Program-made: the position numbers and the translations under genes
The notes under the pieces: generated by a model
Told to the model about the DNA's origin: nothing
Databases searched by the model: none
The model's input: the letters and a program-made list of their open reading frames with translations, nothing else
Assembly (NCBI RefSeq): GCF_040938485.1
Contig: NW_027272500.1
Span: forward strand, 186,001-250,000
Direction of reading: 5' to 3'
DNA from: Diadema antillarum
Lineage: Eukaryota
Length of the DNA stretch: 64,000 nt
Part shown: positions 3,612 through 47,300 of the stretch, piece by piece
How the letters are laid out: each line of letters begins with the position of its first letter
Position numbering within the stretch: the stretch's first letter is position 1

Positions 3612-3757
3612 TTAATTTTCAGAAGACAGTGGTCGCTCTTTCCTCTTGATTATCACTATCGCACAGGTCAACAACGACAGGAAGAACACAATGACGAGCA
3701 GGACGTACGTGGTCGACAGCCGCTGAAGAACTCCTCGACGGAGACCAGCAATCGGAT
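3612..3757 (-). CDS. Copy A terminal exon: transmembrane helix and short tail
   Basis: ttacag|AT CCG; PIAGLRRGVLQRLSTTYVLLVIVFFLSLLTCAIVIIKRKERPLSSEN*; homologous exons in B and C. Confidence 0.85.
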
Positions 3758-6700
3758 CTGTAAGGCAGGAACAAATATTAAGGGAGTGCAAAAGCATTAA
3801 AAAAAATGAGTATCTGAATATAAGAACGACCCAAGTCCAAGGAAGGCCATTTGGAGTAAACTTAAAAAAAAAAAACTTCATATGAGAGAAGCGATGAGAG
3901 AGGGCGCTATAATATGTGACCGTGCACCTCAAAACGAACATAAAGTCGCACACACTGGTTTTGCGTGAGGACTGAAAACAAGTGAAATGGGTCAACCTAG
4001 CCGAACTTGACTTTTTCATATTTTCTGAAAGAGCAGGTCTTCTTTTACATTATGCTAAAATTTGGTATCGTGAAACGGGCAGGAAAGTGTGTTTTTTAGC
4101 AGTTTATCTCGAACATTTTTGATAGAATAGTGTGATTAGGTGTGTCTTCAGAATCCCTTTTTCATTTCTGAAAAACCTTTTCCACACTCTTCACTTTCAA
4201 CTCTAATGACTTTTGAAAGGATAATGCTACTGCTTTGAAAGTTGACATTAATTATGGACAGAATGTGTTAATGAGGCATGCTTAATTTCAGTTTAATCTG
4301 ATAATCCCTTCATTGTTGTTACTCCAGTGGTTTACTTCCTGTTTTTTGTCCCATTCATCGCACAGCCAGCACGGCTTGGTAAAGATTAAGCGCTTGAATA
4401 CACACTGTACTTCAAAGCCTCTTTTCTCAGCTCACACTTTTTCTGAGATTGTGCTTTCTTTCCAATATTTAGATAGGTTAGGAGAGTCCATTTGATTTGA
4501 GTTATACATCATTTTAAAGCTTAAAGTCTGCTCTTTCAGAATATGGTCTTAACTAAAAAGTCATGTCTGGCGACTTTTTGTTTGTTTTGAGGTGCACTGT
4601 CACATATGAATGTAAGAACGACCCAAGTCCTGGACTTATGTCATTCTTACATTCATATAAGATTTGACTCATTCATTTCAGACACTTCCGGGGGTAATTA
4701 GGATTTATCATTTATACACAAGATGAGTACATGCATAAGCTACAATTTCCTACGTCAAACTGAATTTGGCCAAAAATTGGACTTGGGTCGTTCTTATATT
4801 CAGGTCTTCAATATTGTTACTGTTACGGTGAAATTTCACTCTGAGTCCAGACTGTAACACCAGAGAATTAACTAACATACCAGGGGAAGTATCGTCTTCA
4901 GGAAATAAATGGATGAAGTTTCGTTAAACATTTAATTTTCCACGATGATTAACATTCAATCTACTTGTTATGTAGGGGAAAACAAAAGTTTCAATCGTCT
5001 TTAAAAGCGCGAGCTCTCTCCAATTTGATAAATTATGTTTTGATTTCTACGGGTTTAAATTTGAAAACAGAAACCAAACCGAAGGCAGGTTAAGTAGGTA
5101 ATTATGCTCCTGTTAATAAGAACAGTCTGATTGTTTTTCCTTATATTATTGATGTCCACACTGCACTAGGCATTCCAGGGCGAGTATCTGACTGATTAGC
5201 AAAAATAATTTCTTGATGAATAGGATGTGGGCAGTTGATATGTCCATCTTGGATGTATATGAATGAACCCTACCGAACTTGCATGGAAAGCCGTAGGCCG
5301 AGCCATGAACAACAGAGAGGCTATTCCAGAAAATTGCAGGAAATGGCCGACATTGTTTGTTTGTTGTTTTTTTAGATGGAAGAATGGGATGCTACGAAGT
5401 CGATTTTCCCATTTAATTGCCATGGGTGGAGATAATAATTCTCCGTTGTGTCGCCGTTGTGCCGTTACTGTTTATTGGTCAATACGAAATAGAAAGGTTT
5501 TTGTTTGCTCTGAATGTTAAAACTTGATAGCTTGTCTACTAAAACAGTAAACAGTATCATAAAGTAGCTTAAAATTCGATCTTCTCCTCTGAAATGCATA
5601 TTAAAAAGAGCGGATCCTTTCTGGGGAACCTATCATCACAAAATTTCTGGCTCAATATTTTCCATTACTTAATTGTTTTAAGAGAAACAAACTTACATTG
5701 GACATGTAACGTTCTTAACTGTTCGCTGCTAAGAAGGCTGCACTGAAGGACTCCTCCATGATCAGCCACGGTTGGATCCAAAGTCAACTCGCTTCTAACG
5801 CTGTACGTAGCTACATTGACAGTTCCTTAAAAACAATACAAATGATCAAGAATGATAATAAACTGGTCATTATTTTTAGTACTTCAAAGTTGTTGTAACT
5901 TGATGACCATCGTAGACCACCGCATCCTGTAGACACAGATCGCAATCTCATTGGCCAAGATGTTCACTGGAAAAAAAAAATCTGTAAGAATTGTTGTCTA
6001 ACAGAATCACACCAGTTTTTCAATTATAAAGGAATGTAATCATTGATACTGGATATTGATTTTGTCGTATTTCCGAAGCAGGTTTTCTTGTATAATCCAA
6101 CCTAAAAAAGACAGAATATATACATTGAAAAAAAATTCAAAGTGATTAAAGACGCAATGACAATAAGAACAGATAATACTAAAGTAAACAATGGTAAATG
6201 ACATTACTTTCCTAATGAAATAGTGGGTTGTTTTTTTTTTTTTGGTAAAGTCGGAATAATCATTCTCCTCCACATCCCCACCCAGTAACTTTCCTTTTAT
6301 GTCAACATCCTTGTGCTTTGTAGATTCATTAACATATCAGCACCATGAGTATGTTTTTCAGGTAGAATGATTGCGTTGTAACACTTTCTCTATTTTACTC
6401 AATGCTGCACTTGCTCCAGATAAGTCTGGTTCAATGATAGGCATATGCATGATATACAATACATGTAAAACAACAACAACATAAAAATATCAAACAAACA
6501 AAGAAAAACATGCACAGCTTTAAACCCATCACCTAATATTCACCTACAACACTCCCTCGCAATTACTCTTTCAAATTTCTACAAATACAAGGAGGGATAT
6601 TCTTATCTCGTCACATCTTGACCCTTTCGCTGACACACATATTTTGAAAGAACCGAAATTTAAATGTGAATGTGGACTGAGAAAAAGCAGCAATGCTGGC

Positions 6701-8141
6701 AGACCGCATCATTGAATGTTTGAAGAATATCGGATAATAAAGTGGAAAATTAGACTATACTTATTGTTTATCATGGCAAGCGTTATAATATTGAAAGGTC
6801 ATCATATCACTTTTCTGTTATCCTTGCCTCCTATGCATTATTTCTCCTATCATTCAATTCATTTAAATGCCATGTATATGTTGTAAAATACTCAAGATAA
6901 TTCAAGTTGTTCTATACGCAATTATTGTAATTTTTATACGTTATCATTTGTAAAAAAAAGTATGATTCATAATACACGTTAATTTTACATTGGATGGAAT
7001 ATACTATGTAATATTATTGAATAGGAGGTTGGACTTTAATTGCATACATAATGAGACGTATAACGTATCATAAAAGCATGTAAAACATGAAACACCCCAG
7101 CAAAATCATTCACTATGAAGACTGACATGTAAATACTAGATAATTATTTCAATTCCTCAAAGAATAACGGAAAAGAAGCAATGAACACACTTTTAAAAGG
7201 CAAGGGCTCGTCTAGTCCTATTGGATATTTTTGGAGAAGCGAAAAAAGTTTTATCCTACCTACCAGGGGCGTCACAAGCTTTTTTCAAGGTGATGGTGGG
7301 GGGGGGGGGGTTGCGTTTTGAAAGTAAATGTAACCTGCGATATTTTTTTTTTAGTTGATTTATTGGTTCCTGTATCATCATGTACGCGCACATACACTGT
7401 ACATACATACTATTTATACATACATTGCTGGTAGCAACATATAAGCATAAGTTGCTTTGGAAGTATTTGTCTACATTACCTTTACAATGTACATATATTT
7501 TTGGATGTGAAATTGTGATATCTGGTGCACACTCAATAGAGCATTATTTTAAACATCATACTAAGAGACATTATATTTTGTATTTTGAATTGTCACAGGA
7601 AGTTTACACGTACTTTACGTATGGAATCGACAATTAGCCATGGCTTTAATAGTTAAACGCCCACAGCCACACACACACACACAGCAGCACGCACACGCAC
7701 GCACACACACACACACACAAACACACACACAAACACATACTGGAGAGAGATTTAGGGGAATTTGATTTTTGAACGAACAAATACAACGAACTCTCTAAAA
7801 AAAAAAATCGAGTGAAAATTTTCACTCTTAAAGGATTGAATACAAAAAAGAGTGAATTTAGAGTGAAATTGGAGTGAATTTCGAGTGAAAAATGTTCAAT
7901 TTCACTAATTTCGGATTGACGTCAGGGATCACTCCAAAATCTTCGAGTAGTAAATACTGGCGAATAGATATGACTCATCAGTGCTGCCGGAGCCCCGGAC
8001 TGCGAATTGTTTTTCTGAGACGACCTTTTTGTCCATGTTGCAAAATATCAAGGAAAATAAAAACAAAACCCGGAATGATTATTTTTAGCGTCCGGCGTTG
8101 AGGTCGCTCGCAGACTGAGGTTGTAATAAGTACACTCAGCC

Positions 8142-8213
<72 letters not shown>

Positions 8214-11200
8214 TATGCATATTATTCTGTCTGCCTACGAATTTAACTTCCGTGGACTTGTGGAATAAACTTACTGGTTCCCTCACACCTCACTCCAGCG
8301 TCTTCATAATGACCACAGTTATGGCATCCCCAGTAAGCCCGCCGACATTGCAGCAGAGAATGTTCCGTTCCAGCACAGTTGACTGGGTCAAGCCAGATTG
8401 GTCCCGTTCCCTCTCCAAAGTGGGCGTCAGTATAATAATCTGAGGCCGATGAGTAGCCGAGCTCTCTGCAGACGACGTGCGCGTTGTTAATATCCCAACA
8501 ATCATCACAAACCGTACCCCACTGCCCGTTGCACCTTATCTCAACTCGGCCCTCTCTTCCGCTTGATCCACCAACCAGCCTCACTGTGTTTTATAAGAAA
8601 AATATTGTAGGCCTATAGAATCGACGGAGCATACACATACACAAGTCAATGTAATGTATTGTATTAGTTATGATACATTGTACTATGATATCCCCCAGTT
8701 TGAAATTCAATTACATACAATCTGCATTGAAAAACGGTCGATACATACAAAATAATAAGGCATGTGTCTGTTCAGGTATGTGTATTACAGTGATTGTATG
8801 GTCATATTATTAAACATTCGATGAATAATTGCTGGTGAAATCTTCGGACGATTTGCTGGGTTAAGTTTCTGTTCATCGTTGCTATTATTTTTTTGATAAT
8901 AATAATAATAATGATAATAATAACATCAACAACAATAAATAATAATGATAATGATAATGATAATTTTAATCATTTCTTTTTAGCAAGAATAGAGGACGAA
9001 AAACTTTAATGTTGACGCTGATGCAAGATCAAACATTTCTGTTTCATTTTGCCCTGCATGTTAAGTGTGTGTTTTGGAACGTTGTCATGATATAAATCCG
9101 CGTGTACTCACCCGCATAGCCGGGACACGTTGTTGAGTTAGTGTTACAGTGGCAATAATGTAGTGTGGTCGCTATACTCTCGAACTTGGTCTGCTTTTGT
9201 CAGTAAGTGTTGCTGGTCATCCATTCCAGAAGAAATCATCTTCTCGTAGATTTTTGAATGACGATTTCCTAAGGAATGTTGATAAAGGGGAAAAGTTGAA
9301 ATTTATAACCAACAATAATTTACTAAGAAAGAAGCAACAATGGCTAGTAGCGCCATGTTATTAACATAAAATCATGTAGAAAAGTCTTCTGTCATTTCCG
9401 TCGGTCAGGAATTCAAACCTGTCCGTGAAAAAGAAGTTCTCTTCAGAAGACCTGTTCCAATACTCTTCTCCGAAATAATTCTCATCATTACAAATGACGC
9501 ACTCTTTCTTTTGCCAAGCCTGTCGTAGTAATGCGATACAAAAATTAAATGGAATTAGATGGAATTGGCAGAATAATAAACCGGAAGAGGCGATCAATAG
9601 GACAGTTCTTTTATAAGCTTCCATCGCTAAAACTATCAATATTTGTCAGTTTTATATTCAGCGTCATATCTGCACATAGACGTCATCACAGTGTATAATT
9701 GAGCAAAGACAATTATAACGCGGTCCTCCTAAACCAAGTCGTAGAGAGGACGTTATATCATGAGGCACTTCGCTCTTTCAGCGGGTTCTATCTCGGAGTT
9801 TATGGAGTGTAAAAAAAAAAGTTACTCTAAAACCCTAAACTACACGTCTGCTGCAACGCAGGTAAGATCAATAAGTATTCCAACTCTAGAACTCTATAGA
9901 AGAAGAAAATTCTAACCTTAAAGGGTATTAAAACGCATATTTCTGTGATTACTCGTTATTGCAGGTGAAAGTTCACTTCCGCTTTCAACCTCCAATGCTT
10001 TTCCCTTTGCCGTAAGTGCGACTTGAATCTTTGATCTATGCTCATTTCGACAATGTGAACATTCCTTTCACTTACAGTAACTTACAGATATGTTATACAA
10101 AAAGCATATAATTTGCAAGATTTGGCTATATTATTTTGTAGTATTTCCAATTCTTTAACGGTCACTTTTTGCAACCTCAAGATTACAAGTCTCGGCTTGT
10201 ACAAGAATGTTTTATCTAACCTTTATAAGAAATGGGCAGAAACTGAATACCTCACAACACCAATGACGGCTATTTGATTCAATGTTTGTGTAGTCTAACA
10301 AGTTAAGGTACCGCGTCATAAACTTTTTTACATTCAAGGCATCTCATCATAGGCTAGTTTGCATTTATATATTTCTTTTAATATTTTTGGGGTCAGTCTA
10401 TAAATCACACAATGTAGAGGGTCCGTTATGAAAGCCTCATAACCTGCCTAATGTCTCTCTTGGAAGTATTTCCACCATTCCTTAAAAGAAGCAGATTTAT
10501 CATGATTCTGAAATGAGAATTGTGAAATAGGCTGCAAGGTTATGATGAGTGATTCTTTAAGTCCAGGTTGCCTTATAAACCCATCGGGGAGAGCGTTTGT
10601 GAAGATTAGAAATTGGTCCGTTTTGTTTCCCTCTCCTGATGTCGGTGAAAGTTCATATCCGATCAACCTGCGCATTGAGTTCGTCAAAAAGTATGGATTT
10701 CCTCATTGTCATTGTGGGCGTGAATGGAGAGGTGATTTTTTTGATGTATTACAGTAATTATTTCTAATCTATAAGGTATAATATTATCATGAGAGTACGG
10801 TAAGGTTTCAAAAGTTATCCTCATACTTTTTCTTGTAGAAGGGGTTATTATGTTATGTTTTTCTCATGCTCGTGTCTCCCCTATAAATAACCGAGTATTA
10901 GAGTGTCCGCTGAGAGTCTGTAAAGTTTCTTCCCTTTTACTCTTCTCGGCTGTCATATATTGAAGCTGAATCTTACACTTAATTTGAGCTAAAATGTGTC
11001 AAATCTTCGTCTCCAGCTCATGTGTATGGGTAAGAAAAGTATCTGTCCTTTTCTAGAAATCATTGATAAGTGAAATACACGCACTATTTGTGGAATAAAT
11101 GTGCGGATAATAATCGAGGGTGTCGCACTAGGTGAAAGGTTACTTCCGTCTGGGTTAGGAGATTCATTTTCTGAGGCGTTCCCTATATGCGCCTTGAATT

Positions 11201-11415
11201 TTCATATTATAATTTACATTAAAATAAAAAAGTATATTTCTGTATATGTCGAAATGTCTATATAATACAGTTGAATAAAAAAGGCAGAAACCCCCCCAGA
11301 TTATTTGACATTCGTTTCTCTAATTTGTAGAATGCATCACGTGCCTCCGTCATCCTTTCGCACTGAATGATGGACTTCAGCATTATTCAGCAGTTGAGAT
11401 ATATAAATATATACT

Positions 11416-11453
<38 letters not shown>

Positions 11454-14400
11454 GCGTGTGCGAGTGTATGTGTGTGTGTGTCTGTAACTTTATCATGCTA
11501 TAACAAGGAACACATCAATCCAACTCTTACATTTACGTCTACTTAATTCTGATGTAACATTGCACCCAGATGTGATTACACAGAAGCAAGGAGCAGAAAT
11601 TTTCATCAAAACTGAGGCCTAAAAGTCTTGATTGTCAAGCTCGTTCGAAAAGTCTGCTTTCAGGAATTGCGCCATCAAATTTGTCAAGAGGGCATCTTAT
11701 TGTTCTTAAAATGACAAATTTCAAAGACCCTTGCCTCCAAAGTCATAATTTTATCTAGCGCATTCGGGTTGTACTTCATTTTCCACAAAGATTTCGTTGG
11801 TGGTGGTGAAGCCGACTGTCATGAAGCCGTCTGTAATTTGGCCGCCATTCAAAAACCATGTTGGTACAGCCGAGTCTGAGACATTATTTCCTGTGCAAAC
11901 CGCGGTGACTTCACGGCCATCTCGGAGATTCGAGGGTATCTCGAGGTTCAACGTCATTCCAGCTGCAAAGGAAATGTAGGAAGATTGACTGATAGATCCC
12001 AATAGAATCAATCTTGATAAAATCAAAAGAAATGTCTTCTACGCCTCAACAATGCATCCGTTATTCACAGTCTCAAATATTGCACAGGGTAACAACATGA
12101 TTAGTATTAGGCTTTCCCTTGTATCATGTATGGATATATGGATACATGGAATAGATTGATGGAATCAACAATGCAATTGACGTAATAATGTGATATACAT
12201 CAAAATGTTCAAACTAAATGAAACGGTAAGATAATTATGTTCATGAGTTTGAGGACCTTAATGCCCACTGTTGAATTTCCACTGAACGTTATGATTTCAA
12301 AGTTGCAGCAGATCTTTACGCTGTGCTGATTCAGACTTTTTAATGAAACACATATCGAAACGACGAAAAGTGCACAGTGATGAAGGTGAAGAAATAAACC
12401 AAGTCTTAAATGATTTTCTCTTACCAATGAGGTGAATGTTTATGAAAAGAAGCCCGACCTGCACCAATACTCTGTTGTCAATCATTGTGAGCATATTCCT
12501 GTAGATATTAAAATCCTGGTGGATAAAATGGGGGAAAAATCAATCAATTGATCGATCGATCAATCAATCAATCAATGGTATCACGAATGGACATGAGAGA
12601 GGCGATAAAAGACCTATAAAACCCAAAGTAGTTATTTTCGATTTACAAGGTTTTACGATTAGTTGAGTAATACGCTTGATATGATAGAATAAAAATTGAT
12701 ATTTCGAAGAGAAACACAATCTGCATTTTTTGATTGATTTCCTCACACTTACTCGCGAGTATCTTTCAAAAATATGAGGAGAAGTTGAAAAATAAGTTTT
12801 GAAATTCGCCAATCTCCAGAAATAAACTGTTCTGCCTCGTTTACCATGAAGCTAGTATCAAATCAGGGTCGGTACCATGCGTGCATTTAAAATGTCTGGC
12901 TTTTATTGAGTCACTAGTACGATACGTGCATATGAAAGAGGCATCTCACATGACAGAATCCACAAGATTAGTCCGCGTATTGTGATGTGTCATTCAGTTT
13001 CCTGCTTCCCAAGCAGCCACGATTTTGTCTTTTGTTTTTGATGACGCCTCGTTCTTACATTTTACCCAAGATGAATGTTAATTTCATGATCTCTTCATTT
13101 TACAATTGAATGGTGAAATCTTTTTGATTTAGATTTCAAGTCCTTGTCTGCATCACGATGCGATTATATGTCGAATTTTTACTATGAGGCATTACATGGA
13201 ACATTTTGAGTATTTCAATATATCATTGCTTTTGGCAAATTCGAACAATTCCTTTGCATTGAATGGAATGAAGTTTGTTTTCTGCATGTAGTTCGGAAAA
13301 AAAGTCATGCCATTTGTTTGTTTGTTTGTTTGTTTGTTTGTTTTCTGCGTAATCGGCGTTTCAAGTGTTTTGGTTGTTGTAACTGCAAATTGAAAAGTAT
13401 AGGGTTGAAAAACACCGATCAATGTTTCCACTAAAATGAGATGTGGGGACAGAAACGTGAAAATGTATCTATATCATATATATGTGACCGTGCATCACAA
13501 AATGAACAAAAAGTCGCACGCACTGATTTTGTGTGAGGACTAAAAATAGGTGAACAGGGTCAATTTGGTCAATTTTGACTTTTTTTATATTTTCCTGAAA
13601 GAGCAAGTCTTCTTCTACATTATGCTAAAATTTGGTATCATGAAATGGACAGGAAAGTGTGTCTTTGGGTAGTTTATCTCGAACTCTTTTTCTCTCGCCA
13701 TGTTTTTTGTTAGTCATATTAATATCACAGAAACATTCAAGTTATGCTGAGGCGAGAGGAAGGTGCATTCAAATATCTTTTGTTAAACATTTCAGTACTT
13801 TAGCAATGATTGACAGATGAGGTCATCTGAAGAATATTGGTTTGATTTTTTTTTTTTTGTGTGTGGGCGTTCCCAAGTAATCTGAAGAAAAATTGGGGAA
13901 AAAATCGTTAAGAATATGGAATGTTTCTTGATATTCATTTCACCGCTAAAGTGATGTTGAGGGTATCATAAATCAATTCAAATCAACACGCATTTGGATT
14001 TCAGGGCCCCTTTAAGGACATTTCAAATCGATGATATCCTTTGATAAGAATAGGGCCTATGTTTATCTATAAAGAAATGCTTTTTTTAACACGAGCCGTT
14101 TTATTTAGTTCAGTATGGCAGATGAAAGAAAAGTAATAGAGAAAATGACATAAACGAATTCGATTCAAATGTGGTTTAGTAGGGTAATGTCAAAGGGACA
14201 TTAATGCCTTCATTGTGAAAATGGACGAGATTTGTCATGGTGGGAAACCAGACACTGCCTGTCAGTCATAGATCATGTAGCTTCTTAAATCCTACACTAT
14301 TTCTTCCTGTCTATTGACATGATGCTTTATCGTTGTTCCGTCTCATGTATCACTGCTCTTGTTTTCACTGCTCGTCATATTACCGGTTTTTGTTGACTTT

Positions 14401-15667: not shown

Positions 15668-15803
15668 NNNNNNNNNNNNNNNNNNNNNNNNNNNNNNNNN
15701 NNNNNNNNNNNNNNNNNNNNNNNNNNNNNNNNNNNNNNNNNNNNNNNNNNNNNNNNNNNNNNNNNNNNNNNNNNNNNNNNNNNNNNNNNNNNNNNNNNNN
15801 NNN
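15668..15803. other. Assembly gap (136 N)
   Basis: Run of N; the equivalent site in copy C (about 63740-63940) is a (TA)n/(CA)n microsatellite patch. Confidence 0.99.
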
Positions 15804-19338: not shown

Positions 19339-19475
19339 TCAAGAGAGACTTATCTCTCTCCTCTTCACGATCACTGTCGCACAGGTCAACAACGACAGGA
19401 AGAACACGGCGACAAGCAGGGCGTACGTGGTCGACGGCTGCTGAAGAACTCCTCGACGAAGACCAGCAATTGGAC
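19339..19475 (-). CDS. Copy B TM/tail exon
   Basis: ttacag|GT CCA; PIAGLRRGVLQQPSTTYALLVAVFFLSLLTCATVIVKRREISLS*. Confidence 0.85.
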
Positions 19476-28607: not shown

Positions 28608-28658
<51 letters not shown>

Positions 28659-31600
28659 CTACATCAAATCCAATCAAATCAAATAGTTGGTTTTTTTTTG
28701 TAGGTGAAAAAGCAACAAAACGTTCACAAATAATCAATCCCCGAAGTGACAATGTTAAGTTCCCTCTGAAGGAGAAGGCAGTGAGGAAAACGGGCTTTGC
28801 CTCAGTAGAGCAGAACTCTGAGTGTATAGCTGCCATTGCAGGGACTGGAACCAGAAACCTACACGTTCTTTAATATCTACTCAAATAGAAACAGCTATAA
28901 AAAAATACACTCGAGAACATGCTGACAGAGTCTGAACGCCCAAAATAAATGTGTTTTTCTTTTCATTGCCATTGTCCGAAAGATATCTTGAAAACACACA
29001 CTCAGAACCTCTCCAACCCTCCATGACTCATAACGATTAAGAGATGATGATCGCTTTTCTTTAGTCACATTACATCTAACGCTATATACACACGTTTATA
29101 TGATATCGAGTACGGATTAATAGCTTCATAGCTTTACCACATAACAAATACCTTAAAGTTTTTGCATGACTATGTTGACCTCTTTACTTCATTAATAGGT
29201 CTTATCACGTATGTATTTACAAAATAATGTTAAAACATTACATGATATCAGAGTGATAAAACGGGGCAGTCTCCCTTCCTTCTCCTAGCTTGCTGTAAAA
29301 AATCACGAATATAAGGCAAAAAGGGAAAACGTCAAATAAGTATGTCTACGTTAAAACTAGCCATGAAATCATAGAGCCTACAATGAACTATGCATATTAG
29401 CGTAATCATTAAAGTAGATATTCGTGAATTAATGAATCAAACTTACGGTCTCCTTCACACCTCACTCCGGCGTCTTCACTGTGACCACAGTTATGACATT
29501 CCCAATAACAACGTGGGCATTGTAATAGGGAGTTTTCTGTTCCAGTACAACCAGTCCCGTCAAGAAATATTGGTCCAGATCCCTGCCCAAAGTGCGCGTT
29601 AGTATAACTAGCTGAGGCCGATGAGTAGCCGAGATCTCTGCACACCACGTGCGCGTCGTTGATACCCCAGGAATCGTCACAAACCGTGCCCCAACGCCCG
29701 TTACACCTTATCTCAACTCGGCCCTCCCTTTCACTTGATCCACCAACAAGTCTCACTGGAGGAACAGAGAGGGAAATACATATAGCAGACTAGTCATATT
29801 CACACAACACACAATACATCATAGAAACAACCACAAAAAAGATGAACACATACATATAGTTCAATGTGATATATTATGCTACCAGGCATCTCTCAGCTTG
29901 AAATTTACTTACAGAAAGTGTTTATTGGCAAACTAAATGATGATACACTACAAAAGTGAAACGTGTGCAAGTGGATGTTTTTGTATGATTTATTCATATC
30001 ATCAAACATTCAATTAAAACTTTCTCGGCAAATTTTATCCATAAGAAGGAAGGAGAATGAATAAATATAACCAATGTCTGTTTCTCTTTGCCGTGTACGT
30101 TTGGTGCGTGTTTTGGAACGTTGTCAAGATATCAAGGCGCATGTACTCACCCGCATAGCCGGGGCACGTAGTTATACGACTGCTACAGCGATATAGTGTG
30201 GCCGCTGTACTCTTGAATAATGTCTGCCTTTGTCAGTCAGTGCTGCTGGTCATCCATATCATAAGGCATTGTCTTTTTATCAAGTTTAAATGGCGATTTC
30301 TTTCAGAGTATGTATGGAGGGAGATGATAGGGATTCATCTTCACCATTGATTCACTGAAATAGTTGCAATAATTGTTAATAGCGTCATATTTATTAACAT
30401 GAACTCTAAGGAAACATGGACTGCCACTTCCGTCCTTCAGGAAATTAAACCTGCCCTGGAAAATCAGATACTGGTCAGCACATTTGTCATAATTCATTTC
30501 CTACTAACAAATTATCATAATTGCTTCTGTTAATCTCTTCATTTTGGGGACACATGTAAGACTTGCGTGAGACAAGGGATCAAACATGAAACACTTCCTG
30601 TTAATTGAAATGGCAGAAAATAAACCAGAAATGACGGTGTAATTGTATCAGTTGTTTTATGAACGTTCATTGCTTCCACCATTAAGATTCTCCAAGTCTA
30701 TATCCATAGTCACTTTTACACAGGGAAGACATCAAACTATAAAATTGAGCAAAAATAACTATAATGCGGTCGTTCTACTACAACGTAGTGGGGACGTTAT
30801 GCCATGACACATATCACTCTACCAGCACGTTCTATGGAGGAGGATGACAAAGTTATTCATGAACCCCAAACTACACACCTGATGGACTTATATCACCTCA
30901 GGTAAGATGAACAAGTATTCAGATACCAGACACCTCCTATAGATGAAGTAAAATTTACCTTTAAGGGGTGTTAAAAAGCTTGTTTCTGTGACTACTCGTT
31001 ATTGTAGGTGAAAGTTCACTTCCGTTTTCAGCTGTTAATGTTTTTCCAGTTTGCCGTAGTGTGACAGATATCTTTTTCACTGTGCTCATTTCAACGGCAT
31101 AAGCATTCATTAAGCTTGCAGTAGATTGCCTATATGTTACACAAGAAGTATCCCATCGATTACTATTTTTTTTCTTTTAATTTTCAGAACTTCAGACTCT
31201 GCACTGAATAATTTTAGCAACTTCATTAATACGAGTTTCGGCTTGTACAAGAATGTTTATTGTAACCTTTATAAGGAATGGGCAGAAACCGAATGATTCC
31301 CAACACCAATGACGGCCATTTTATTCAACATTTGGTCAGTCTTTTAATTTCAGGTACTACGTCCTCATGGTCTAAACTCCAGGCATTCTCAGCACTGGCT
31401 CGTAGGCATTTCTCTATTTCTTCGAAAATGTTTGCGGTCAGTCTATACACCGTAGAGGGTCCGTTATGAAAGTCTCATAACCTGCCTAATGTCTCACATG
31501 GAATTATTCACCGTCATGCCTTAAAAGAAGCGGATTTATCGTAATTGTATATTTGGGAATTACAAAAAATGCTGTATGGTTCTAAAGAGTGATTCTATAG

Positions 31601-34600
31601 GGCCTGTTGCCTTATAAGCCCGACGAAGACAGTTTTCTGGAAGACGAAAAATTGGACCGTTTTTGGTTCTTTCTCTTATTGTCGGTCAAAGTTCACATCC
31701 GATCAACCTCCGCTTTGGGAATGAATATGGATAAAGTCATCACCATATAAGTGGGCGTGAAAGGAAATTTGATTGGCAGTGTCAGTTAGGATAATTACTC
31801 ACTATACGCGCTGTATCTTGGAGAAGGAAAACAATGGTCCATGCATGCCAACTGATCAGCGACTTTCTTCTTTAGCTTTGTCAATGGTTTTTGTTTGCTG
31901 TTTTATTAATTCAATACATATTTTGCCTATGATAAATTGTGCTTTTCTCATTTCACATACAAAATTGCCACCTAGATAATGTCTAAACGTATGAAAGGGG
32001 CATAAAGGATGCTGCTGTTGATTCAAGATGTTCCCATGATCGTTTACAAAGCACTAAGTTCTATTAACATTTTTACGTTATGTTTATATGTATGTCTGTA
32101 TACAAAAAAGTTGAACATCTTCTTCATATACCTTTATTCTTTGTGAAGTTGAAAATTCTATTACAATAATCATTATTGTGTAAAGTTTCTGCAGAAAAAA
32201 AACGGTTTGTTTCAGGGATTTCAGAATAGATGAACTGCAGCTGATAGATGGAACATGCTCCAAATATTTGTTTCAAGGGTAAAGAAGGATTGTCATAATT
32301 TTATTTTTGATGGTATGGGAATGGTAAGATAGTTGTCAGTTTTAGTTGAAGATGAGCGAATTCGTCTTGTGGCTGGAGATATGTTGATAAGAGAGAGAGA
32401 GAGAGAGGGAGAGGAAAAAAAATAAGTAATGAGAGATATAGATTGGGGGAGGGGAAATAATTGTAAATACGTATGGATGGTATTATAAAGGTGTTTTTTT
32501 TTTCATACTATAGAGACGGAAATCCTTGTGAAGTGTATCCTCTGGTTTTATTTGATAGATGGCTACTTGAGTTTATGCCAGAGAAGGAGTATGATAGGCC
32601 TACATAAGTGATTTGACATAAGGAAAAGAATTATGTGACCGCCAAAACTGATGGGTGTTTTCTTAACCAGATTGTGATATCGGATACACGTGAGGCTGCC
32701 AAACCACGCCCACTCTCAGGCGTAACTGCCAGCTGAATTTTCTTTCATTGTTTGGAGCTGACAACATTTCTTTTGATGTTCATTATCCGAAAGAAGACGA
32801 AATGTCAGTCCATTTTTCTTATGTATTTTCATAAATAATTTATCATCTGTAGCAATAACATTCTTATTAAGGTGCAGTTTGATTTCATTCACCCTCCTAA
32901 TATGGTTTCTTGTAGATGGTGTTTCTTAACAATTTTTCTCATATTTTCATGTTCTCCCTAGACAATCCCTAGAGTGTCCGCTGAGACATGTAAAATTTGT
33001 TCCCTTTCACTCTTGTCAGCTCTAATGCATAGAGAACAAATCTAACACTCACTTTTTCCCAAAATCGATCAAATGTTCTTATTCAACATGTGTGTACGGG
33101 TAGATCAAGTATTTGTCCTTCTTTTTAAGTTATGTTAAGTGGAATAAATGTACTATATGTGTAACAAATGAGTGGATATCAATCGAGGGTGTCTCACTAG
33201 GTGAAAGGTAACTTCCGTCTGGGTTACGAGATTGAGGAACTAAACCGATTTCTATCTCCGTCTTCCATAATTTGTCATTTCCCTTTCAAAATTTCAGATT
33301 ATTTTCAAGGTCATAAGCACTTGCAAGTGGGAGATTAACAGTTCCTTGTCATTTTCTCAGTATTTCGACGAATGCTCACGCAACAACATCATTTTCTATC
33401 ACACAAACACACTTCCATAACTTCAAAAGCAATACATTGCCATACCAAAGAGACGATCGTGCTGTACAGCCATTACTCTAACTTGAAAGATCATTTCTTG
33501 TGGTGGTTCTTGTAGATGAGTTGATACACGCAGACTTTAGTGGATGCTGACAGTGGCACTTTCTTCACCTATGTTACAGTTGTAAATGTGTATTCTGTTT
33601 TCAGAATTTGAAAGGACACAATCTAATTAAGCTCTCGAAAAAGTCAAATGTGTTCTGCTTTGGCACAATGACAACAATTGCGCTCGATGTAGGGGGGAGC
33701 AGAAAATGGCACCAAAACTGCAGCATAAAAATGGTGTATTTCAACCTTCTCCGAAAATCTTGCAGGCAGAAAATTGTTCCACTGGGTTTGTTTGCATCAA
33801 TAGTTATAAATTTGTAAAGTGCTTTGGCGAAAGTATCATTCCCTCTAAAGTCACCAACCTATCTATCAACAGGTTGGTTGTACTATTTGTTGCTCAATGA
33901 CTTCGCTGGTGGTGGTGAAGCCGCTTGTGATTTGGACGCCATTCAAATACCAGGTCGGTGCAGCTGAACCTGGGACGTCATTTCCGGAGCACACTGCCGT
34001 GACTTCACGGCCAGCCCGGAGAGGAGACGGTACCTCGAGGTTCATTGTTAGTCCAGCTGCAAAAAGACACAAAAAATATCCAATTATTAAACTTCGATGG
34101 CATCAAATATGGCAAAATGAATAAAGATGTCTTCTTTGCCTGGTTGTGTAAATCCATTATTCAACTGATGGTGTAGTTGTAGTTGAAATGGGGCTTCAGG
34201 TTTCGAATGCTTTCGTATGATTATTGGAAACTTTCTTTTTATGAAGCATCAAAAAGCATATAATCTTAAGAAGAATTCAAAGTTAATTTGACGAAAATTG
34301 CTTTTGAAATGGCTGAGATATGAAACAAGAGGTCCTGATAAAGGTGCCATCTACTTTTTAATAGGACAATTTTGTTTTTATCAAATAAGCTTTGAATTTC
34401 TTTTTAGAATTGTATGCTCTTTATTGAAACATCAGTGATTTCTAATCATCTCTTTAATAAGAAGAGAGTTATTGCCCTCGAATAAGCAAATATAAATATA
34501 AAAGAGATTTTTGTCCATTGAAATAAGGTAAGATAAGGAAGTCGGGATGGAATTAGCAATATATTTGACGGCTAAAACAGTCAAATTCACCTTAAGTTAT

Positions 34601-40442: not shown

Positions 40443-40900
40443 TCAAGAATGATACGAAAAAATGAATATCATGATAGTTTTAGAACAGTACTTGACAGCA
40501 CTTAAGTGATGAACAGGTAGGCCTAATTATGTAAAGAAAAAAAGATAACACAGAAGCTTTTTTCTCCCCAGCTTTATGAGTATCCCTGTTTTAAGTAAAA
40601 TGAGCGCTTTATCAGAGTTTATCATTATCATTGAATAAAATGTAAAGAGTTCAACCTGCAACTGTTAAACTGTTCAAGAATGATACGAAAAAATGAATAT
40701 CATGATAGTTTTAGAACAGTACTTGACAGCACTTAAGTGATGAACAGGTAGGCCTAATTATGTAAAGAAAAAAAGATAACACAGAAGCTTTTATCTCCCC
40801 AGCTTTATGAGTATCCCTGTTTTAAGTAAAATGAGCGCTTTATCAGAGTTTATCATTATCATTGAATAAAATGTAAAGAGTTCAACCTGCAACTGTTAAA
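40443..40900. repeat. 231-bp near-perfect tandem duplication
   Basis: 40443-40669 repeated at 40674-40900 with one mismatch seen. Confidence 0.9.
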
Positions 40901-41251: not shown

Positions 41252-41388
41252 TCAAAAGACAGTGGCCTCTCTTCTCTTGACTATTACTGTCGCACAGGTC
41301 AACAACGACAGGAAGAACACGGCGACGAGCAGGGCGTACATGGTCGACGATTGTTGGAGAAATCCTCGACGAAGACCAGCAATTGGAC
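41252..41388 (-). CDS. Copy C TM/tail exon
   Basis: ctacag|GT CCA; PIAGLRRGFLQQSSTMYALLVAVFFLSLLTCATVIVKRREATVF*. Confidence 0.85.
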
Positions 41389-44300
41389 CTGTAGTAATGC
41401 AGGACCAGATGTTAAGTGAGTGAAAATCACTTCGACAGAACGGAAAAAAGAACTATAAAGACGTTATGAGGAAATTTCATTCTGCGTCTAGACTGTAAGA
41501 CCCCTGATTTTCTCGTCCACTTACATACAACTGATCGTATCACCTACAGGATGCAATAATGTATGAGTTTGACACCGTCTTTCAGTGTTTCGTAGGAGTT
41601 AACTACAACTGACAAACAAACACACACACACACACACAGATTCCTGCTTTCGAGTGAATTATACTATTAGAACATGTCTTACAAAATCGAGTCAAATTGG
41701 TATATTTATTTAGAGTTTATGAAAACACTCCATGACTTCTTTACGTATTTCTATTACAAATGTGTTTATTTCTCTGTTTATTTGATGGTAATGAAAATAA
41801 TTTCAAACTTGGAACTTGAACTTTGAATCATCATCGGAGTACCTCGCGCTGACTTTAATACCTTTATCCGAGCCCAAAGTTGGACAGTGTTCAGCACTTG
41901 TGTAGGTCCAACCAATCCCGTTAGTCCCAGAGCACGTGACATTTATGCACCTGTTGCCTGGGCGTGGTCTGAAGAGAGCCGAGGCGCAGCTGGACGAGGA
42001 AAGCGTGGTGTTGTCGACTCCGATGGTGTAAGTGTGAAGGTGTGGGAACGGCTGGTCTTGAAGACTAATGTGACACGTGATGACGAGAATGACCTGGCTT
42101 CTTTCCCCATTGATCTCCTGAGTCTCAATGGAGAGGATGTTCCTCGCTGGGGGCGCTTGACCTATGAGAGAGGATACAATGTATGTGTCTTCATCCAAAA
42201 GCAGAACAAACTTATTCTCGACAAGTTCATTAAAAACAAAAAGTACATAGTATTATAACCATAAAATATTGTCACTTAGAATAATTTATGAAATAAACAA
42301 GCCATTTGTTTTCTCTTTAATTGTCTTATCTCCACCCATAACAAGCCTATAAAACTTGCCTAAACAAAACATAATAAAGAAATCAAAAAGCCGAAATAAT
42401 ATATGTGACCCTGCACCTCAAAACAAACAAAAAGTCGCCAGACATGAATTTTTAGTTAAGACCATATTCTGAAAGAGCAGACTTTAAGCTTTAAAATGAT
42501 GTATAACTCAAATCAAATGGACTCTCCTAACCTATCTAAATATTGGAAAGAAAGCAAAAACTCAGGAAAAGTGTGAACTGAGAAAAGAGGCTCTGAAGTA
42601 CAGTGTCTATTCAAGCGCTTAATCTTTACCAAACCGTGCTGGCTGTGCGATGAATGGGACAAAAAACAGGAAGTAAACCTCCAGAGTAACAACAATGAAG
42701 GGATTATCAGATTAAACTGAAATTAAGCATGCCTCATTAACACATTCTGTCCATAATTAATGCCAACTTTCAATGCAGTAGCCTTATCTTTTCAAAAGTT
42801 ATTAAAGTTGAAAGTGAAGAGTGTGGACAAGGTTTTTCAGAAATGAAAAAGGGACTCTAAAGACACACCTAATCACACTATTCTACCAAAAATGTTTGAA
42901 ATAAACTGCTAAAAAACCACACTTTCCTGCCCATTTTATGATACCAAATTTTAGCATAATGTAAAAGAAGACCCACTCTTTCAGAAAATACGAAAAAGTC
43001 AAGTTCGGCTAAGTTGACCCATTTCACTTATTTTCAGTCCTCACGCAAAATCAGTGTGTGCGACTTTATGTTCGTTTTGAGGTGCACAGTCACATATAAA
43101 AGCATTTAAACACATTTGAACATGAACTCTCAATCAAATAAGAAATATCATCTATTATCCTTTCTATTATTATCAGAAGCTATAAGGAATCTACCTGGTC
43201 TCAGTGGGCAGTAGTTCCACGTAGAAACCGTCTCCCCGAATTGATTGATACCGGTACACGATATATCGATACACCGGTTGGGTTGACCTTCCATGATCGT
43301 TGAAGATGCGTTTGACCTTGACAAAATGTCTCCATCAGCGGTGATTTCGAAGACACCGATCGGTGGAAACGGTTGATCGATCGGATCCACGTGACATGAG
43401 ATACTGAGATTCGTTCCCCACTCATCCTTGTCTTCTTCTACCTTGATAGAAATGATGTTAGGCGCAGGTGGGTCTGAGAAATGGAAAGAGATGTACATGG
43501 GGTGTAGTACAAAAAGTTGACAAAAGTTGAGGAGGCCTTATAGCATAATGTATTGCTTTAAACATAGACATGAATCCGGCTTTATGGACACAATGTGTTG
43601 GAAGTGTGCACTAAATAATGCCAGCGCTAAAGCAGGCAATTGGAAAGGACTTAATAAAGTTAAACAAGACACAATTACTTTATGAAGGAGACATGTAGCA
43701 TCTCCTTAATTAAGTAATAATGACCATGTAAAGTTTCTCTAGGGCTGGATCCAATGCACACGTCAAACGAGTCTTACTTCGGGTAAAGCGCTAAAGCAGA
43801 ACAATGAAATTCTGTATTATATTTTGTTGTGAAAGGAAGCCTTCTTCAATTACAAACATTGTTTGGTTGTTTGTAATACATTAACATTAATGAAAGGGGA
43901 AAAGTCCATATTCCTGGACAGAAATTAAACTTAATGAATGGCAGATCTCTGATATTTTCAGCTTTTCCCACGAATCCCTAAAGTCCCGAATTACTCCATA
44001 CCATTGCAAATGATTTCCAAAATTTACAAGAACATGTCCCGTAAAGGATTTCTACAGAAGAAATAACTCTATTAATCAATGCCGTGGAGACGATGGGAGA
44101 GAGGTACTTTTTGATTTCCTATTGCTCACCCCTCGGACAGTGCTTTGCCAACGTGGAAGTAATTCCGACGCCATTAGTAGCGGAACACGTGACATTAATA
44201 CACCTGTTTGGGCGTGGTCTCAAGACGGCCGAGGTCCAGCTCGCGTTGGACAGGATGGTCCCATCAACTCCAATTGAATACGAATGGAGGTACGGGTACG

Positions 44301-47300
44301 GCTGGTCGGTCAGGTTCGCTCTGCACAGGATTAGTAGATTCATCTGACGGCCTTTGTCTAGGAACTCCGAAGTCTTGATCGACAAGATATCAGATGCGGG
44401 GAGTTCGCCACTGGTTTCTAGTGAAAATGAAAGACGTGCAGTTACAATGTTATAACTAATTACGCTCCATAGGTAGTCAGAAGAGTGACACTAGTAATAA
44501 AAACGAAATTATCCAACTAGTTTATGCTGGTTTTGTTGGAAATCCTTGTAATGGCAGTGGAATAGTGACATTGATAATAGTTCCAAATCTCCCTGTAGTG
44601 GTTATGACCGTCATCAAATTACAAGTGTTCCAAAGCCAAAGCTTACTTCATGTAGTGACCCTATCAAGTATTACAAAATCTCGGATGGCTTTGGAGTGTG
44701 ATAGATACTTGGTGCCTAATATCATAGCAGGATTCAAAATTGCAAATGTGTTCTTACCGCAGCTTTTGGTACAGTACGTCTGTGTGCTGGTCGTCCTACC
44801 GATCTCATTATCACCGGTGCAGGAGATTTCTACGCATCCACTAGGAAGAGGGTCAAGGGTCACCGAAGGGGAGTTTGAAGATGACTGAATGACGTCATTG
44901 ATTGCAATGTCGTATGTACTGATTGATGGAAATGGTTAATCACATAGGTTGACGTGACACGTGATGTTAAGGTCATTGGTTTCGTGTTCATCCTGGAGAT
45001 GGCGGATCTGGATGAGGATGATATTATCCCCGGGGGCATCTGTCACGTTAACAAAGGCAGACAGCTAGTCTGGTCACTGCTGATTGAAGTCTACCTCAGG
45101 TTATACTATCTAATTTTATACACTGTTGGTCATAAACATTGAATGAATCATTTTAGACTTAATTCAAACGTTTCTGTTAGTATTTGCTATGGTCTACACA
45201 AACGGAAACGGTAGATGAGTAATTATGTATCCTGTCCCAATTATACAGGGAATGTCCTAACATTGTGGAAATGTGTCTTACGTAATAATGTCGTTTGTTC
45301 GAGACTATAAAATCCTTTACATGGAGAATTCCGTCTCCTCCAGGCAGGTTTTTGAGCTCTTTGAATCGTTTGCAATAAAAATCGGTAGAGATGATCCCTG
45401 GGCTATTCCTTGCCTAATGTATAATACTACGCGAGAGAGCTGCAGCACTGCGGCAGGAGGGCTTCAAAAAATATAATATTTAGAATATCGTCGGAACATC
45501 AAAGAGTACAATTTGTGAGATCCTGAAACGTCAAAGTGATGCATGGAAAGTGCGTGTGTATTTTACTCCTGTCTGTGTTTTGCAGGATTAGTAAAGTTTT
45601 TTATTTGATCTGAATTCTTAAACATGATGGCTTGTCTTTTTACAACCATTAAACAATATCATAAAGTAGCCTAACAATCTTGAATAACCCTCGAATTACA
45701 TCATTCAAAAAAGCTTATCTCAATCATGCGGAATTTGCCCAATATTTTCCAACCCCAAAATTATTGTTTTAAAGAAAATATACTTACGTTGGACTTGCAA
45801 TGTTCTGGTCTGTTCGCTGCTGAGAACCTTGCACTGAAGGACGCCCTCATGGTCAGCTACCGTCGGAGTTAATGCCAGCTCGCTGCGAACGTTGTACGTT
45901 TTTACTTTGACGGTTCCTTAAAGAGAGAGAGAGAGAGGGAGGGAGAGGAAGCAAAATGATATTAAACGGGTCATTATTTTGATAATTCAATATTAATCTT
46001 AACTTGTTTGACCGTAAGGAAGGACCATGAACCATTAACATCCTCTAGTTATAGATCGCAATCTGATTCGTCAAGATATTCTCTTGAAAATGAAATCTTT
46101 AAGAACTTTTGTCAAAAAGAATCATATTAGCGAACTTAAGAAGAATCGCATTTCCAGAGCAGCTATTATAGTGCTGTCTAATCCATAAAACTTGTAACAA
46201 ATATAGATGTAGTAGGGGAAATGATAAATAATGTTCATATTTGAATGTGGCATTTTTTATAGTGTGAAGGATATATTCCTCCACCACCCCACCCAGTGAC
46301 TATTACTGTTGTTGTTTTGGGGATTTAATCCTTTTCGGTGATACAATGCGTGTCATCAGTAGACATTCTAGTGTCATCCAAGACCGAGTCCGAGTCAAAA
46401 CACTTTGAATCCACGTCTGTTTCAAATCATATGTCCTCTAAATATGAAATCATCGTAATAAAAACATCCCAAGCTTTAAAACCATCACTTATTGAGATAC
46501 AGTACATGTATTTGGCTATCTGAACTACCTCTTTATATAGGAAATAGTTTTCCCCCAAATTTCTACGAATACATGGACGGATTTATCTTGTCACTCTTTC
46601 GTCTGTCCTATGACACACATTTCTAGTTATTTCAAAGGAAACCAAAACCCAAATATGAATGCGGATTAAGAAAAAACAGCAATATTTAAGTAGGACGTGA
46701 TTATTAATGAAGTTTTTAAGAACAGTAAACAATTGATTCAAAATGTATAATATACTGTTGATTATGGATATCGTTATAAACTTTTGCACGTGTTAAAGGG
46801 ATAGTACAGTTTTGGTTGAGATGAGAAATAGGCTTTCGAATTTTTGCAAGATACTAAGAAAACACTTATGATATAGCACAGAGCATACCATTTTAAGAGG
46901 AATTCAAAGTTTTTATTTTGATGAAAATCGGGTTTGGAATAACTGAAACATCCAAAAACAAAGTAAAACAAAGCGATGGTTATAAAGTGTGGGTCCCACA
47001 CTTTATTAGAATCGTTCTTTTTTGGATATCTCAGCCATTTCAAAACCAATTTTTATCAAATAAACGTTGAATTCCTCATAAAATTGCATGCTCTTTCATA
47101 TTTCATATGAGATTTCTCATTATCTCACATAAAAATGTTAGAAACCTGAAATTAGGTCTCAACCAGAACTGTACGATCCCTTTAAGGGTCATCATATCAC
47201 TTTTTTATTATCCTTGCAAAGTATACATTTTTTTTCTTTTCATTCAATTCATTTGTAGGCCCTACATAAATTTTGTAATATACTTTGTGATTCAAGCTGT

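What the first reader, a model, noticed from the sequence alone, without database searches (positions are those of the whole stretch)
3757..45039. Stalk length varies 0, 5 and 4 domains by whole-exon gain and loss
Seen: A joins Ig-b directly to TM (in frame, CAA T|AT), B has D1-D2-D2'-D3-D4, and C has D1-D4. Every stalk exon is phase 1/1 (279-300 nt). Inference: a modular cassette tunes how far the SRCR head projects from the cell, similar to domain-number variation in CEACAM, KIR and Siglec clusters.
Basis: partly seen in the sequence, partly recalled or inferred. Interest (0 to 1): 0.7.

Follow-up and report, generated by a model that had tools for sequence, protein, structure and literature searches.

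The report
Sea urchin receptor stalk-length variation
Three neighbouring surface-receptor genes of the sea urchin Diadema antillarum differ in how many one-exon stalk domains they carry (0, 5, 4), a real but ordinary result of exon duplication and deletion, and one stalk exon in each of the two stalked genes is broken by a stop codon.

Summary
The exon map is right. Genes A, B and C lie on the minus strand. They belong to a Diadema-only tandem family: signal peptide, Ig-a, SRCR, Ig-b, 0-6 four-cysteine Ig/FN3-like stalk domains, TM and a short tail. Every stalk exon is phase 1/1 and 279-300 nt.

A splices Ig-b (ends 5697) to TM (starts 3757). This is not a mis-assembly:
- Contig C1612 carries two more stalkless units.
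- Two orthologous D. setosum loci have the same roughly 1-kb intron and the same B-A-C gene order.
- RefSeq models show the predicted QVQ-Y-PI junction.
- A-type exons evolve under purifying selection.
- In the tree, stalk loss is derived and happened once, before the two species split.

RefSeq skips D2' (and intact D4) in B and ends C at its TAA. The coded stalks here are therefore at most 4 and 3 domains, or the proteins are truncated.

The N gap (15668-15803) lies in the spacer between units and crosses no reading frame.

"Tuning the reach of the head" is untested, and I found no RNA data. Another agent noted the same stalk-domain family elsewhere in this genome (s1-224577).

The parts
3612..3757 (-). 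Gene A, last exon: TM helix, short basic tail (KRKERPLSSEN) and stop TAA at 3612-3614. Phase-1 acceptor cag|AT at 3757.
   Evidence: 96% aa identity to the D. setosum orthologue.
3758..5696 (-). Gene A, Ig-b to TM intron with no stalk exon. About 3799-4822 is a very high-copy transposon-like insert that the paralogues U2 and U5 and the D. setosum orthologue lack.
5697..5825 (-). Gene A, Ig-b exon (129 nt, phase 1/1; donor CAA T|gt).
8275..8583 (-). Gene A, SRCR exon (309 nt, phase 1/1).
   Evidence: Pfam PF00530, E 6.7e-33. Boundaries. The 315 nt compared (8276-8590) are identical in the D. setosum orthologue.
11754..11962 (-). Gene A, Ig-a exon. The acceptor is at 11962. The donor is uncertain, and the open frame runs to 11754.
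12425..12494 (-). Gene A, first coding exon: ATG at 12494, hydrophobic signal-like peptide, phase-1 donor.
   Evidence: 95% identity to residues 1-20 of D. setosum XP_072181435.1.
15668..15803 (.). Run of N in the spacer between units A and B. Not in any exon.
19339..19475 (-). Gene B, TM exon with stop TGA at 19339-19341.
20047..20340 (-). Gene B, stalk exon D4 (294 nt, intact). RefSeq model XP_071480511.1 leaves it out.
20722..21000 (-). Gene B, stalk exon D3 (279 nt).
21638..21925 (-). Gene B, stalk exon D2' (288 nt). It is a tandem duplicate of D2, has intact splice sites and carries an in-frame TAA at 21861-21863.
23048..23335 (-). Gene B, stalk exon D2 (288 nt).
24753..25034 (-). Gene B, stalk exon D1 (282 nt).
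27785..27913 (-). Gene B, Ig-b exon (129 nt; donor CAA C|gt).
29447..29755 (-). Gene B, SRCR exon (309 nt).
   Evidence: Pfam PF00530, E 1.2e-31..
33869..34063 (-). Gene B, Ig-a exon (limits taken from the match).
41252..41388 (-). Gene C, TM exon with stop TGA at 41252-41254.
41862..42161 (-). Gene C, stalk exon D4 (300 nt).
43195..43473 (-). Gene C, stalk exon D3 (279 nt).
44130..44417 (-). Gene C, stalk exon D2 (288 nt).
44758..45039 (-). Gene C, stalk exon D1 (282 nt) with intact splice sites and an in-frame TAA at 44936-44938. RefSeq XP_071480512.1 ends there.
45788..45916 (-). Gene C, Ig-b exon (129 nt).
49520..49828 (-). Gene C, SRCR exon (309 nt).
   Evidence: Pfam PF00530, E 2.3e-32..
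53166..53369 (-). Gene C, Ig-a exon (limits taken from the match).

Best explanation
The window is part of Diadema antillarum contig C1612 (186001-250000). It holds three adjacent paralogues (A, B, C; minus strand) of a tandem family found so far only in Diadema. The encoded proteins are type I membrane proteins. They consist of a signal peptide, an Ig-a exon, a single-exon SRCR domain, an Ig-b exon, 0-6 four-cysteine Ig/FN3-like beta-sandwich domains, one TM helix and a 7-13-residue basic tail.

Shown:
- Each stalk domain is one symmetric phase-1 exon of 279-300 nt. Ig-b and TM share that phase, so any number of stalk exons can be added, deleted or skipped without changing the reading frame.
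- D2' in B is a tandem duplicate of D2. Other units carry three D2 exons or an extra D2x-D1x pair.
- The A type lost the whole cassette in one deletion that fused the first and last stalk introns. This happened before D. antillarum and D. setosum split. The stalkless gene has since been kept, duplicated and held under purifying selection.
- On this haplotype B_D2' and C_D1 each carry a private single-base nonsense codon.

Inferred:
- The changes arose by unequal recombination between the similar introns of the array.
- The proteins are surface recognition or adhesion receptors, probably of coelomocytes. Stalk number sets the distance of the SRCR/Ig head from the membrane by roughly 4 nm per domain (general knowledge of Ig-fold dimensions).
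- Full-length B and C proteins can only be made if the broken exon is skipped.
For: Identity of the locus:
- RefSeq proteins XP_071480511.1 (gene B) and XP_071480512.1 (gene C) match the window's exons and lie on a 360,002-bp contig.

Gene structure:
- SRCR matches PF00530 with E 1e-31 to 1e-33.
- The AF2 model of the stalk domain has pLDDT 85 and seven strands. Its best structural matches are gp130 FN3 (Z 10.6) and FCRLA Ig-C2 (Z 9.5).

Distribution of the stalk domain:
- The stalk profile finds only 25 proteins among 1.84 billion representatives. Of the 20 with E <= 1e-10, 18 were looked up. Sixteen carry Diadema names and two are unnamed ENA sequences.
- The first look found about 1,800 candidate exons in the genome.

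Census of the contig:
- 14 complete units carry 0, 4, 5 or 6 stalk exons.
- 54 of 57 stalk exons are intact.

The A type is real and old:
- Contig C1612 carries three stalkless units, and a fourth A-type intron match lies on C554.
- The intron is chimeric and holds no stalk remnant: 2.3 bits or less, against 298 bits in the control.
- D. setosum loci L031 and L033 have Ig-b and TM about 1 kb apart with no stalk exon, in the same B-A-C order. L033 is collinear with A at 88-92%.
- The A-type clade has support 0.94 and is nested among stalked units, with stalked outgroups.
- dN/dS for A is 0.41 against its orthologue and 0.28-0.47 against its paralogues.
- Single-copy parts of A are present without change in a second individual from another study.

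Stops and gap:
- The two stop codons are documented. The nearest copies, at 96-99% identity, are open.
- The gap lies in the spacer between units.
Against: - No RNA evidence was obtained. None of the listed sequencing runs is on record as RNA, and all the runs I laid on the window were contigs. Expression and splicing of A, B and C in this animal are therefore unverified.
- No contig bridges the repeat at 3800-4900, so the continuity of A's own intron rests on the long-read assembly and on the collinear orthologue.
- The functional role of stalk length is inferred only. The tail has no recognisable signalling motif and the TM helix has no charged residue.
- RefSeq models skip intact exons: D4 in B, and five stalk exons in D. 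setosum XP_072178827.1. Splicing may therefore matter as much as exon content.
- The 1.75-Gb assembly retains both haplotypes (PMC13511894). Some near-identical units, such as U0 compared with B, could be allelic copies or assembly duplicates rather than paralogues.
- The trees are FastTree trees built from about 150 and about 95 residues.
Confidence: 0.8

Rival explanations
1. Stalk length is set mainly by alternative splicing of the phase-1 cassette exons. Exon content in the genome only limits the choices. Stalkless or short isoforms can be made from stalked genes.
For: The RefSeq model of B joins D3 to TM and skips the intact D4 exon. D. setosum XP_072178827.1 joins Ig-b directly to a B/C-type TM (QVQ-R-PIAG), although its locus L032 holds five stalk exons that an overlapping 363-aa model uses. 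All the exons share phase 1.
Against: These are automatic gene models whose read support is unknown. A-type genes have no stalk exon in the genome of either species. Units also differ in real exon content, with 0, 4, 5 or 6 stalk exons. Splicing therefore cannot be the whole story.
Confidence: 0.4
2. B and/or C on this haplotype are dying genes. The nonsense codons mark loss of function, so '5 and 4 domains' does not describe working receptors.
For: Both genes carry an in-frame TAA in a stalk exon that has intact splice sites. RefSeq ends C at its TAA and predicts a 262-aa product without a TM. The assembly has QV 44.5, so base-call error is unlikely (PMC13511894).
Against: Every other exon of B and C is open and has good splice sites. 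Each stop is a single private change, and the nearest copies at 96-99% identity are open. D2' evolved under purifying selection after its duplication (omega 0.27). Skipping either exon keeps the reading frame.
Confidence: 0.35
3. Unit A's missing stalk is an assembly artefact, or a private transposon-mediated deletion in a pseudogene.
For: A very high-copy repeat fills 3800-4900, and no short-read contig bridges it. An N run lies 3 kb upstream of the gene.
Against: The same stalkless structure, without the transposon, occurs in U2 and U5 on the same contig and at two D. setosum loci. One of those loci is collinear with A. A's exons are open, with omega 0.41. The N run is outside the gene.
Confidence: 0.03

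Closest known systems
Tandem SRCR gene clusters of sea urchins (Strongylocentrotus purpuratus SRCR superfamily; PMC10855680)
   Same: Large echinoid-specific tandem arrays. One exon encodes each SRCR domain. Sibling paralogues differ by loss or gain of whole exons.
   Different: Here each gene has a single SRCR domain. The variable module is a Diadema-only four-cysteine Ig/FN3-like domain that no Pfam model recognises. Diadema was not covered in that paper.
KIR, LILR, CEACAM, Siglec and FcR-like clusters of vertebrates
   Same: Tandem paralogues of type I receptors in which one phase-1 exon encodes one Ig-like domain. Domain number varies by exon duplication, deletion, pseudo-exons and exon skipping. 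This comparison rests on general knowledge.
   Different: There is no detectable sequence homology, so this is an analogy only. The head is an SRCR domain flanked by Ig-a and Ig-b exons, not a V-set or C2 Ig domain. The tail has no ITIM, and the TM helix has no charged residue for adaptor pairing.
WC1/CD163 family and DMBT1 (SRCR copy-number variation; PMC2906472, PMC9038570)
   Same: SRCR-bearing immune receptors whose ectodomain length varies between paralogues or alleles by whole-exon units.
   Different: In those families the SRCR domains themselves are the repeated unit. Here the SRCR domain is single and the stalk domains vary.
Galectin-3-binding protein (the RefSeq name given to A- and C-type models)
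   Same: An N-terminal SRCR domain.
   Different: No BTB/BACK region. Instead there are Ig-like exons, a stalk and a TM. The name reflects SRCR similarity only.

Membership tests
SRCR superfamily | SRCR domain recognised by the curated profile PF00530, above its gathering score | tested here: met
   A scores 113 bits, B 109 bits and C 112 bits, against a cut-off of 26.1.
SRCR superfamily | SRCR domain encoded by one exon, as in sea urchin SRCR genes (PMC10855680) | tested here: met
   The exon is 309 nt and phase 1/1 in A, B and C.
Diadema four-cysteine stalk-domain family (unnamed; also noted as s1-224577) | A domain of about 93-99 residues with four invariant cysteines and a DQPFP-like motif, encoded by one phase-1 exon | tested here: met
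   Alignment A1 has invariant C26, C67, C72 and C88. 57 such exons lie on the contig. All named database hits are from Diadema.
Immunoglobulin superfamily (stalk domains) | Sequence match to Pfam Ig, I-set, C2-set or fn3 models | tested here: not met
   None of the nine stalk exons matches an Ig or fn3 family at E <= 1.
Immunoglobulin superfamily (stalk domains) | Seven-strand beta-sandwich fold | tested here: met
   The AF2 model has pLDDT 85. VIA-align gives Z 10.6 to gp130 FN3, 9.5 to FCRLA Ig-C2 and 9.2 to CD22 d6-d7. Foldseek gives only weak matches, with E >= 1.4e-3.
KIR/LILR/CEACAM/Siglec-type receptor clusters | Homologous Ig domains, plus ITIM/ITAM signalling or a charged TM residue | tested here: not met
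   There is no sequence similarity. The tails are KRKERPLSSEN, KRREISLS and KRREATVF, and the TM helix has no charged residue. The resemblance is architectural only.
Galectin-3-binding protein | SRCR followed by a BTB/BACK region | tested here: not met
   Pfam finds only SRCR in the family's proteins. The window's exons after SRCR are Ig-b, stalk and TM.
Symmetric cassette-exon architecture | All variable exons and both flanking exons share one intron phase | tested here: met
   Phase 1 holds for the Ig-b donor, every stalk exon and the TM acceptor in A, B and C, and in 54 of 57 stalk exons on the contig.

The most novel reading that the evidence does not exclude
The conserved B-A-C trio (long, zero and medium stalk, with related heads) may work as a functional set, kept in that order in two Diadema species since before they split. 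One possibility is a membrane-proximal stalkless receptor or decoy paired with long-reach receptors. The private nonsense codons in cassette exons could then be polymorphic switches that change stalk length by forcing exon skipping.
Probability: 0.1. Interest if true: 0.6.

Novelty: new member of a known kind. Interest (0 to 1): 0.38.

Why it matters
Diadema antillarum is a keystone reef grazer that has twice been struck by mass die-offs, and its immune repertoire is almost undescribed. This locus belongs to a large receptor family restricted to Diadema, with roughly 1,800 candidate stalk exons in the uncollapsed assembly. Public annotation calls its members "uncharacterized" or, misleadingly, "galectin-3-binding protein-like".

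An exact exon map has practical uses. It includes the conserved stalkless type and the two broken exons. With it, paralogue-specific expression, allele surveys and binding tests become possible. As evolutionary biology the pattern is a textbook case, not a surprise.

Tried and rejected
- Pfam on all stalk, Ig-a and TM exons gave no family for the stalk domain.
- Foldseek against the PDB gave only weak FN3/Ig rows. VIA-align was needed to place the fold.
- Sequencing runs: no listed holder is on record as RNA, and all four runs I laid on the window were short Logan contigs. They cannot show splice junctions or bridge the high-copy repeat at 3800-4900. They only show that single-copy parts of A exist unchanged in a second sample.
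- The look-up of encoding contigs for the B model found no record.
I used the 'stops_inside' column of the genome search instead.
- Two scripts got no answer and were rerun in simpler form.
- I considered a claim that A's SRCR exon is unusually conserved between species (0 of 315 nt differ) and dropped it. The flanking unique intron is itself 95-100% identical.
- I considered whether C554 is a simple allelic haplotig of C1612. It is not collinear, so I left the question open.
Searches used single exons by reference or stored database proteins. Exon translations were concatenated only inside local scripts, for the tree and for dN/dS.


Full report
**What the window is.** The window has 36% GC and one N run, at 15668-15803. 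Six-frame ORFs and self-comparison show three tandem units on the minus strand. I call them A (about 1-15667), B (15836-37248) and C (37505 to about 63741). Each unit has an Ig-a exon, a single SRCR exon (PF00530, E 1e-31 to 1e-33), an Ig-b exon and a last exon. The last exon encodes a TM helix, a 7-13-residue basic tail and the stop codon.

The stalk profile and a partial protein query recovered RefSeq proteins that match the window's exons. XP_071480511.1 is gene B and XP_071480512.1 is gene C. Both lie on a 360,002-bp contig of Diadema antillarum. The window is C1612:186001-250000 of a 1.75-Gb, 2,963-contig assembly. The published description says this assembly retains both haplotypes, has QV 44.5, and was annotated by NCBI using 12 RNA-seq runs (PMC13511894; bioRxiv 10.64898/2026.05.24.727502).

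**The gap, tested first.** The N run lies between units. It is about 3.2 kb upstream of A's ATG (12494) and about 3.5 kb downstream of B's stop. Its left and right flanks occur in the same order and orientation at more than seven other inter-unit junctions of the contig. At the junctions without an insertion, 50-220 bp separate the anchors. No exon or reading frame crosses the gap. I did not fill it.

**The observation.**
- B has D1 (282 nt), D2 (288), D2' (288), D3 (279) and D4 (294).
- C has D1 (282), D2 (288), D3 (279) and D4 (300).
- All have AG/GT splice sites and are phase 1/1. Ig-b (129 nt) and the TM acceptor are also phase 1.
- In A the Ig-b donor (CAA T|gt, exon end 5697) faces the TM acceptor (cag|AT, 3757), giving a Tyr codon.

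A profile search with all filters off finds no stalk remnant in A's 1939-nt intron. The best score is 2.3 bits, against 298 bits for the equivalent interval of C.

B_D2' carries an in-frame TAA at 21861-21863, and C_D1 carries one at 44936-44938. At those codons 18 other D2-type exons on the contig read AAA or another sense codon, and 11 other D1-type exons read CAA or CAG. The closest copies elsewhere are open: U0 at 99% identity, C554:298024 at 97% and C554:95626 at 96%. Among the 150 best D1-like matches in the genome, only C_D1 has a stop. Both are therefore private single-base nonsense changes. RefSeq deals with them by skipping D2' (and also the intact D4) in B, and by ending C at the TAA. 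The C product is 262 aa and has no TM.

**Is A real?** I surveyed the whole contig by tblastn and checked splice sites. It holds 14 complete units plus one cut off by the contig end, all on the minus strand. Their stalk exon counts are 4, 0, 6, 4, 0, 6, 6, 4, 0 (A), 5 (B), 4 (C), 6, 4 and 4. Of 57 stalk exons, 54 are intact. The exceptions are the two stops and a 1-bp frameshift in U8_D3.

Two further stalkless units, U2 and U5, share A's intron at 88% identity. A fourth match to that intron lies on C554. In U2 and U5 the intron is about 1 kb. A's extra roughly 1 kb (about 3799-4822) is a very high-copy element.

The A-type intron is chimeric. About 210 bp next to Ig-b match the Ig-b>D1 intron of stalked units. 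At least 420 bp next to TM match their D4>TM intron. This is the signature of one deletion that removed the whole cassette.

In D. setosum two loci show the same structure. L031 is on chromosome OZ188188.1 and L033 is on an unplaced contig. In both, Ig-b and TM lie about 1 kb apart with no stalk exon, flanked by a B-type gene upstream and a C-type gene downstream, as in D. antillarum. L033 is collinear with A at 88-92% and lacks the transposon.

A tree of SRCR plus Ig-b places all A-type genes of both species in one clade (support 0.94). That clade is sister to the C type (0.94) and nested among stalked units, with stalked outgroups. Each of its two sublineages contains genes from both species. 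The loss is therefore derived, happened once, and is older than the species split.

A's exons are constrained. dN/dS is 0.41 against the orthologue and 0.28-0.47 against the paralogues, similar to stalked units.

Short-read contigs from a second individual in another study contain A's single-copy segments without change. No contig bridges the repeat.

**Gain of exons.** Stalk exons form four old clades, with D1 nearest D3 and D2 nearest D4. On top of these:
- D2' arose by a roughly 1.4-kb tandem duplication shared by B and U0.
- U12 has three D2 exons.
- U3, U6 and U7 carry an extra D2x-D1x pair.
- One D. setosum gene has five stalk exons and lacks D4.

Stalk exons evolve under purifying selection, with omega 0.14-0.46.

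**What the stalk domain is.** It has no Pfam match and four invariant cysteines. The AF2 model is a confident seven-strand beta sandwich (pLDDT 85). Its best structural matches are receptor FN3 and Ig-C2 domains with Z 9-10.6.

The profile finds 25 proteins among 1.84 billion representatives. Of the 20 with E <= 1e-10, 18 were looked up. Sixteen carry Diadema names and two are unnamed ENA sequences. The first look found about 1,800 candidate exons in the genome. I reached it independently and agree.

**Mechanism and its limits.** The following are shown:
- A symmetric phase-1 cassette.
- Real differences in exon content between paralogues.
- One ancient complete loss that has been maintained by selection.
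- Recent duplications.
- Two recent nonsense hits.

The following are inferred:
- Unequal recombination as the cause.
- A surface-receptor role.
- The idea that stalk number sets the reach of the head.

Automatic models that skip intact exons raise the possibility that alternative splicing also sets stalk length. Examples are D4 in B and five stalk exons in D. setosum XP_072178827.1. I had no RNA data to test this. No listed run is on record as RNA, and every run I laid on the window was contigs.

**Comparison and verdict.** Tandem sea urchin SRCR genes that differ by whole exons are already published (PMC10855680). Domain-number variation in KIR, CEACAM and Siglec-type clusters is textbook knowledge. 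This case is a new, uncharacterised and lineage-restricted member of that known kind. It is a solid annotation with one important correction (the two stops), not a new principle.

Noticed in passing
window 3799-4822 (core 3912-4640); also 3001-3400 and 7800-8100: Very high-copy repeats, with summed contig depth of 1e5-1e6 and hundreds of 95-98% copies genome-wide. The element in A's Ig-b>TM intron is absent from paralogues U2 and U5 and from the D. setosum orthologue, so it is a recent insertion.
   Followed up: partly
C1612 whole contig; D. setosum loci L031 and L033: The units form a higher-order repeat. In the direction of transcription the order is B-type, A-type, C-type, repeated several times. 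The same B-A-C order is found at two D. setosum loci.
   Followed up: partly
C1612:1-9387 (unit U0) compared with window 20528-29858 (unit B): U0 is 96.6% identical to B over 9.4 kb, with D1 and D2 exons 100% identical. Its SRCR and Ig-a exons are much more diverged (86% and 79% aa). This mosaic could come from gene conversion or recombination between units, or from a haplotype artefact at the contig end.
   Followed up: partly
window 20047-20340 (B_D4); D. setosum locus L032 13455-24661: RefSeq models skip intact stalk exons. The B model joins D3 to TM. D. setosum XP_072178827.1 joins Ig-b to TM across five genomic stalk exons that an overlapping model uses. This points to possible alternative splicing or to annotation noise.
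   Followed up: partly
C1612:172478-172755 (U8_D3) and C1612:27816-28153 (U1 SRCR): Two other damaged exons on the contig. U8_D3 has a 1-bp frameshift, and the U1 SRCR exon is split into two frames.
   Followed up: no
window 11754-11962, 33869-34063, 53166-53369 (Ig-a exons): Ig-a shows dN/dS of about 1 between A-type paralogues and between A and C, while SRCR, Ig-b and TM give 0.2-0.4. Some models splice the signal exon straight to SRCR and omit Ig-a. In C, a small linker exon (about 50520-50605) sits between Ig-a and SRCR.
   Followed up: partly
window 8200-9200 compared with L033: A's SRCR exon is identical to its D. setosum orthologue over the 315 nt compared. The surrounding unique intron is also 95-100% identical, so local divergence between the species is low here and the exon is not exceptional.
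   Followed up: yes
window 40443-40900 and 57910-59013: Two local tandem duplications. One is 227 bp x2 at 99.6% identity, just downstream of C's stop codon. The other is about 550 bp x2 at 88%, in the spacer upstream of C.
   Followed up: no
stalk exon tree (all units of C1612): D1 groups with D3 and D2 with D4. This suggests the four-domain stalk arose by duplication of a two-exon unit. The extra D2x-D1x pair in U3, U6 and U7 fits the same two-exon mode.
   Followed up: partly
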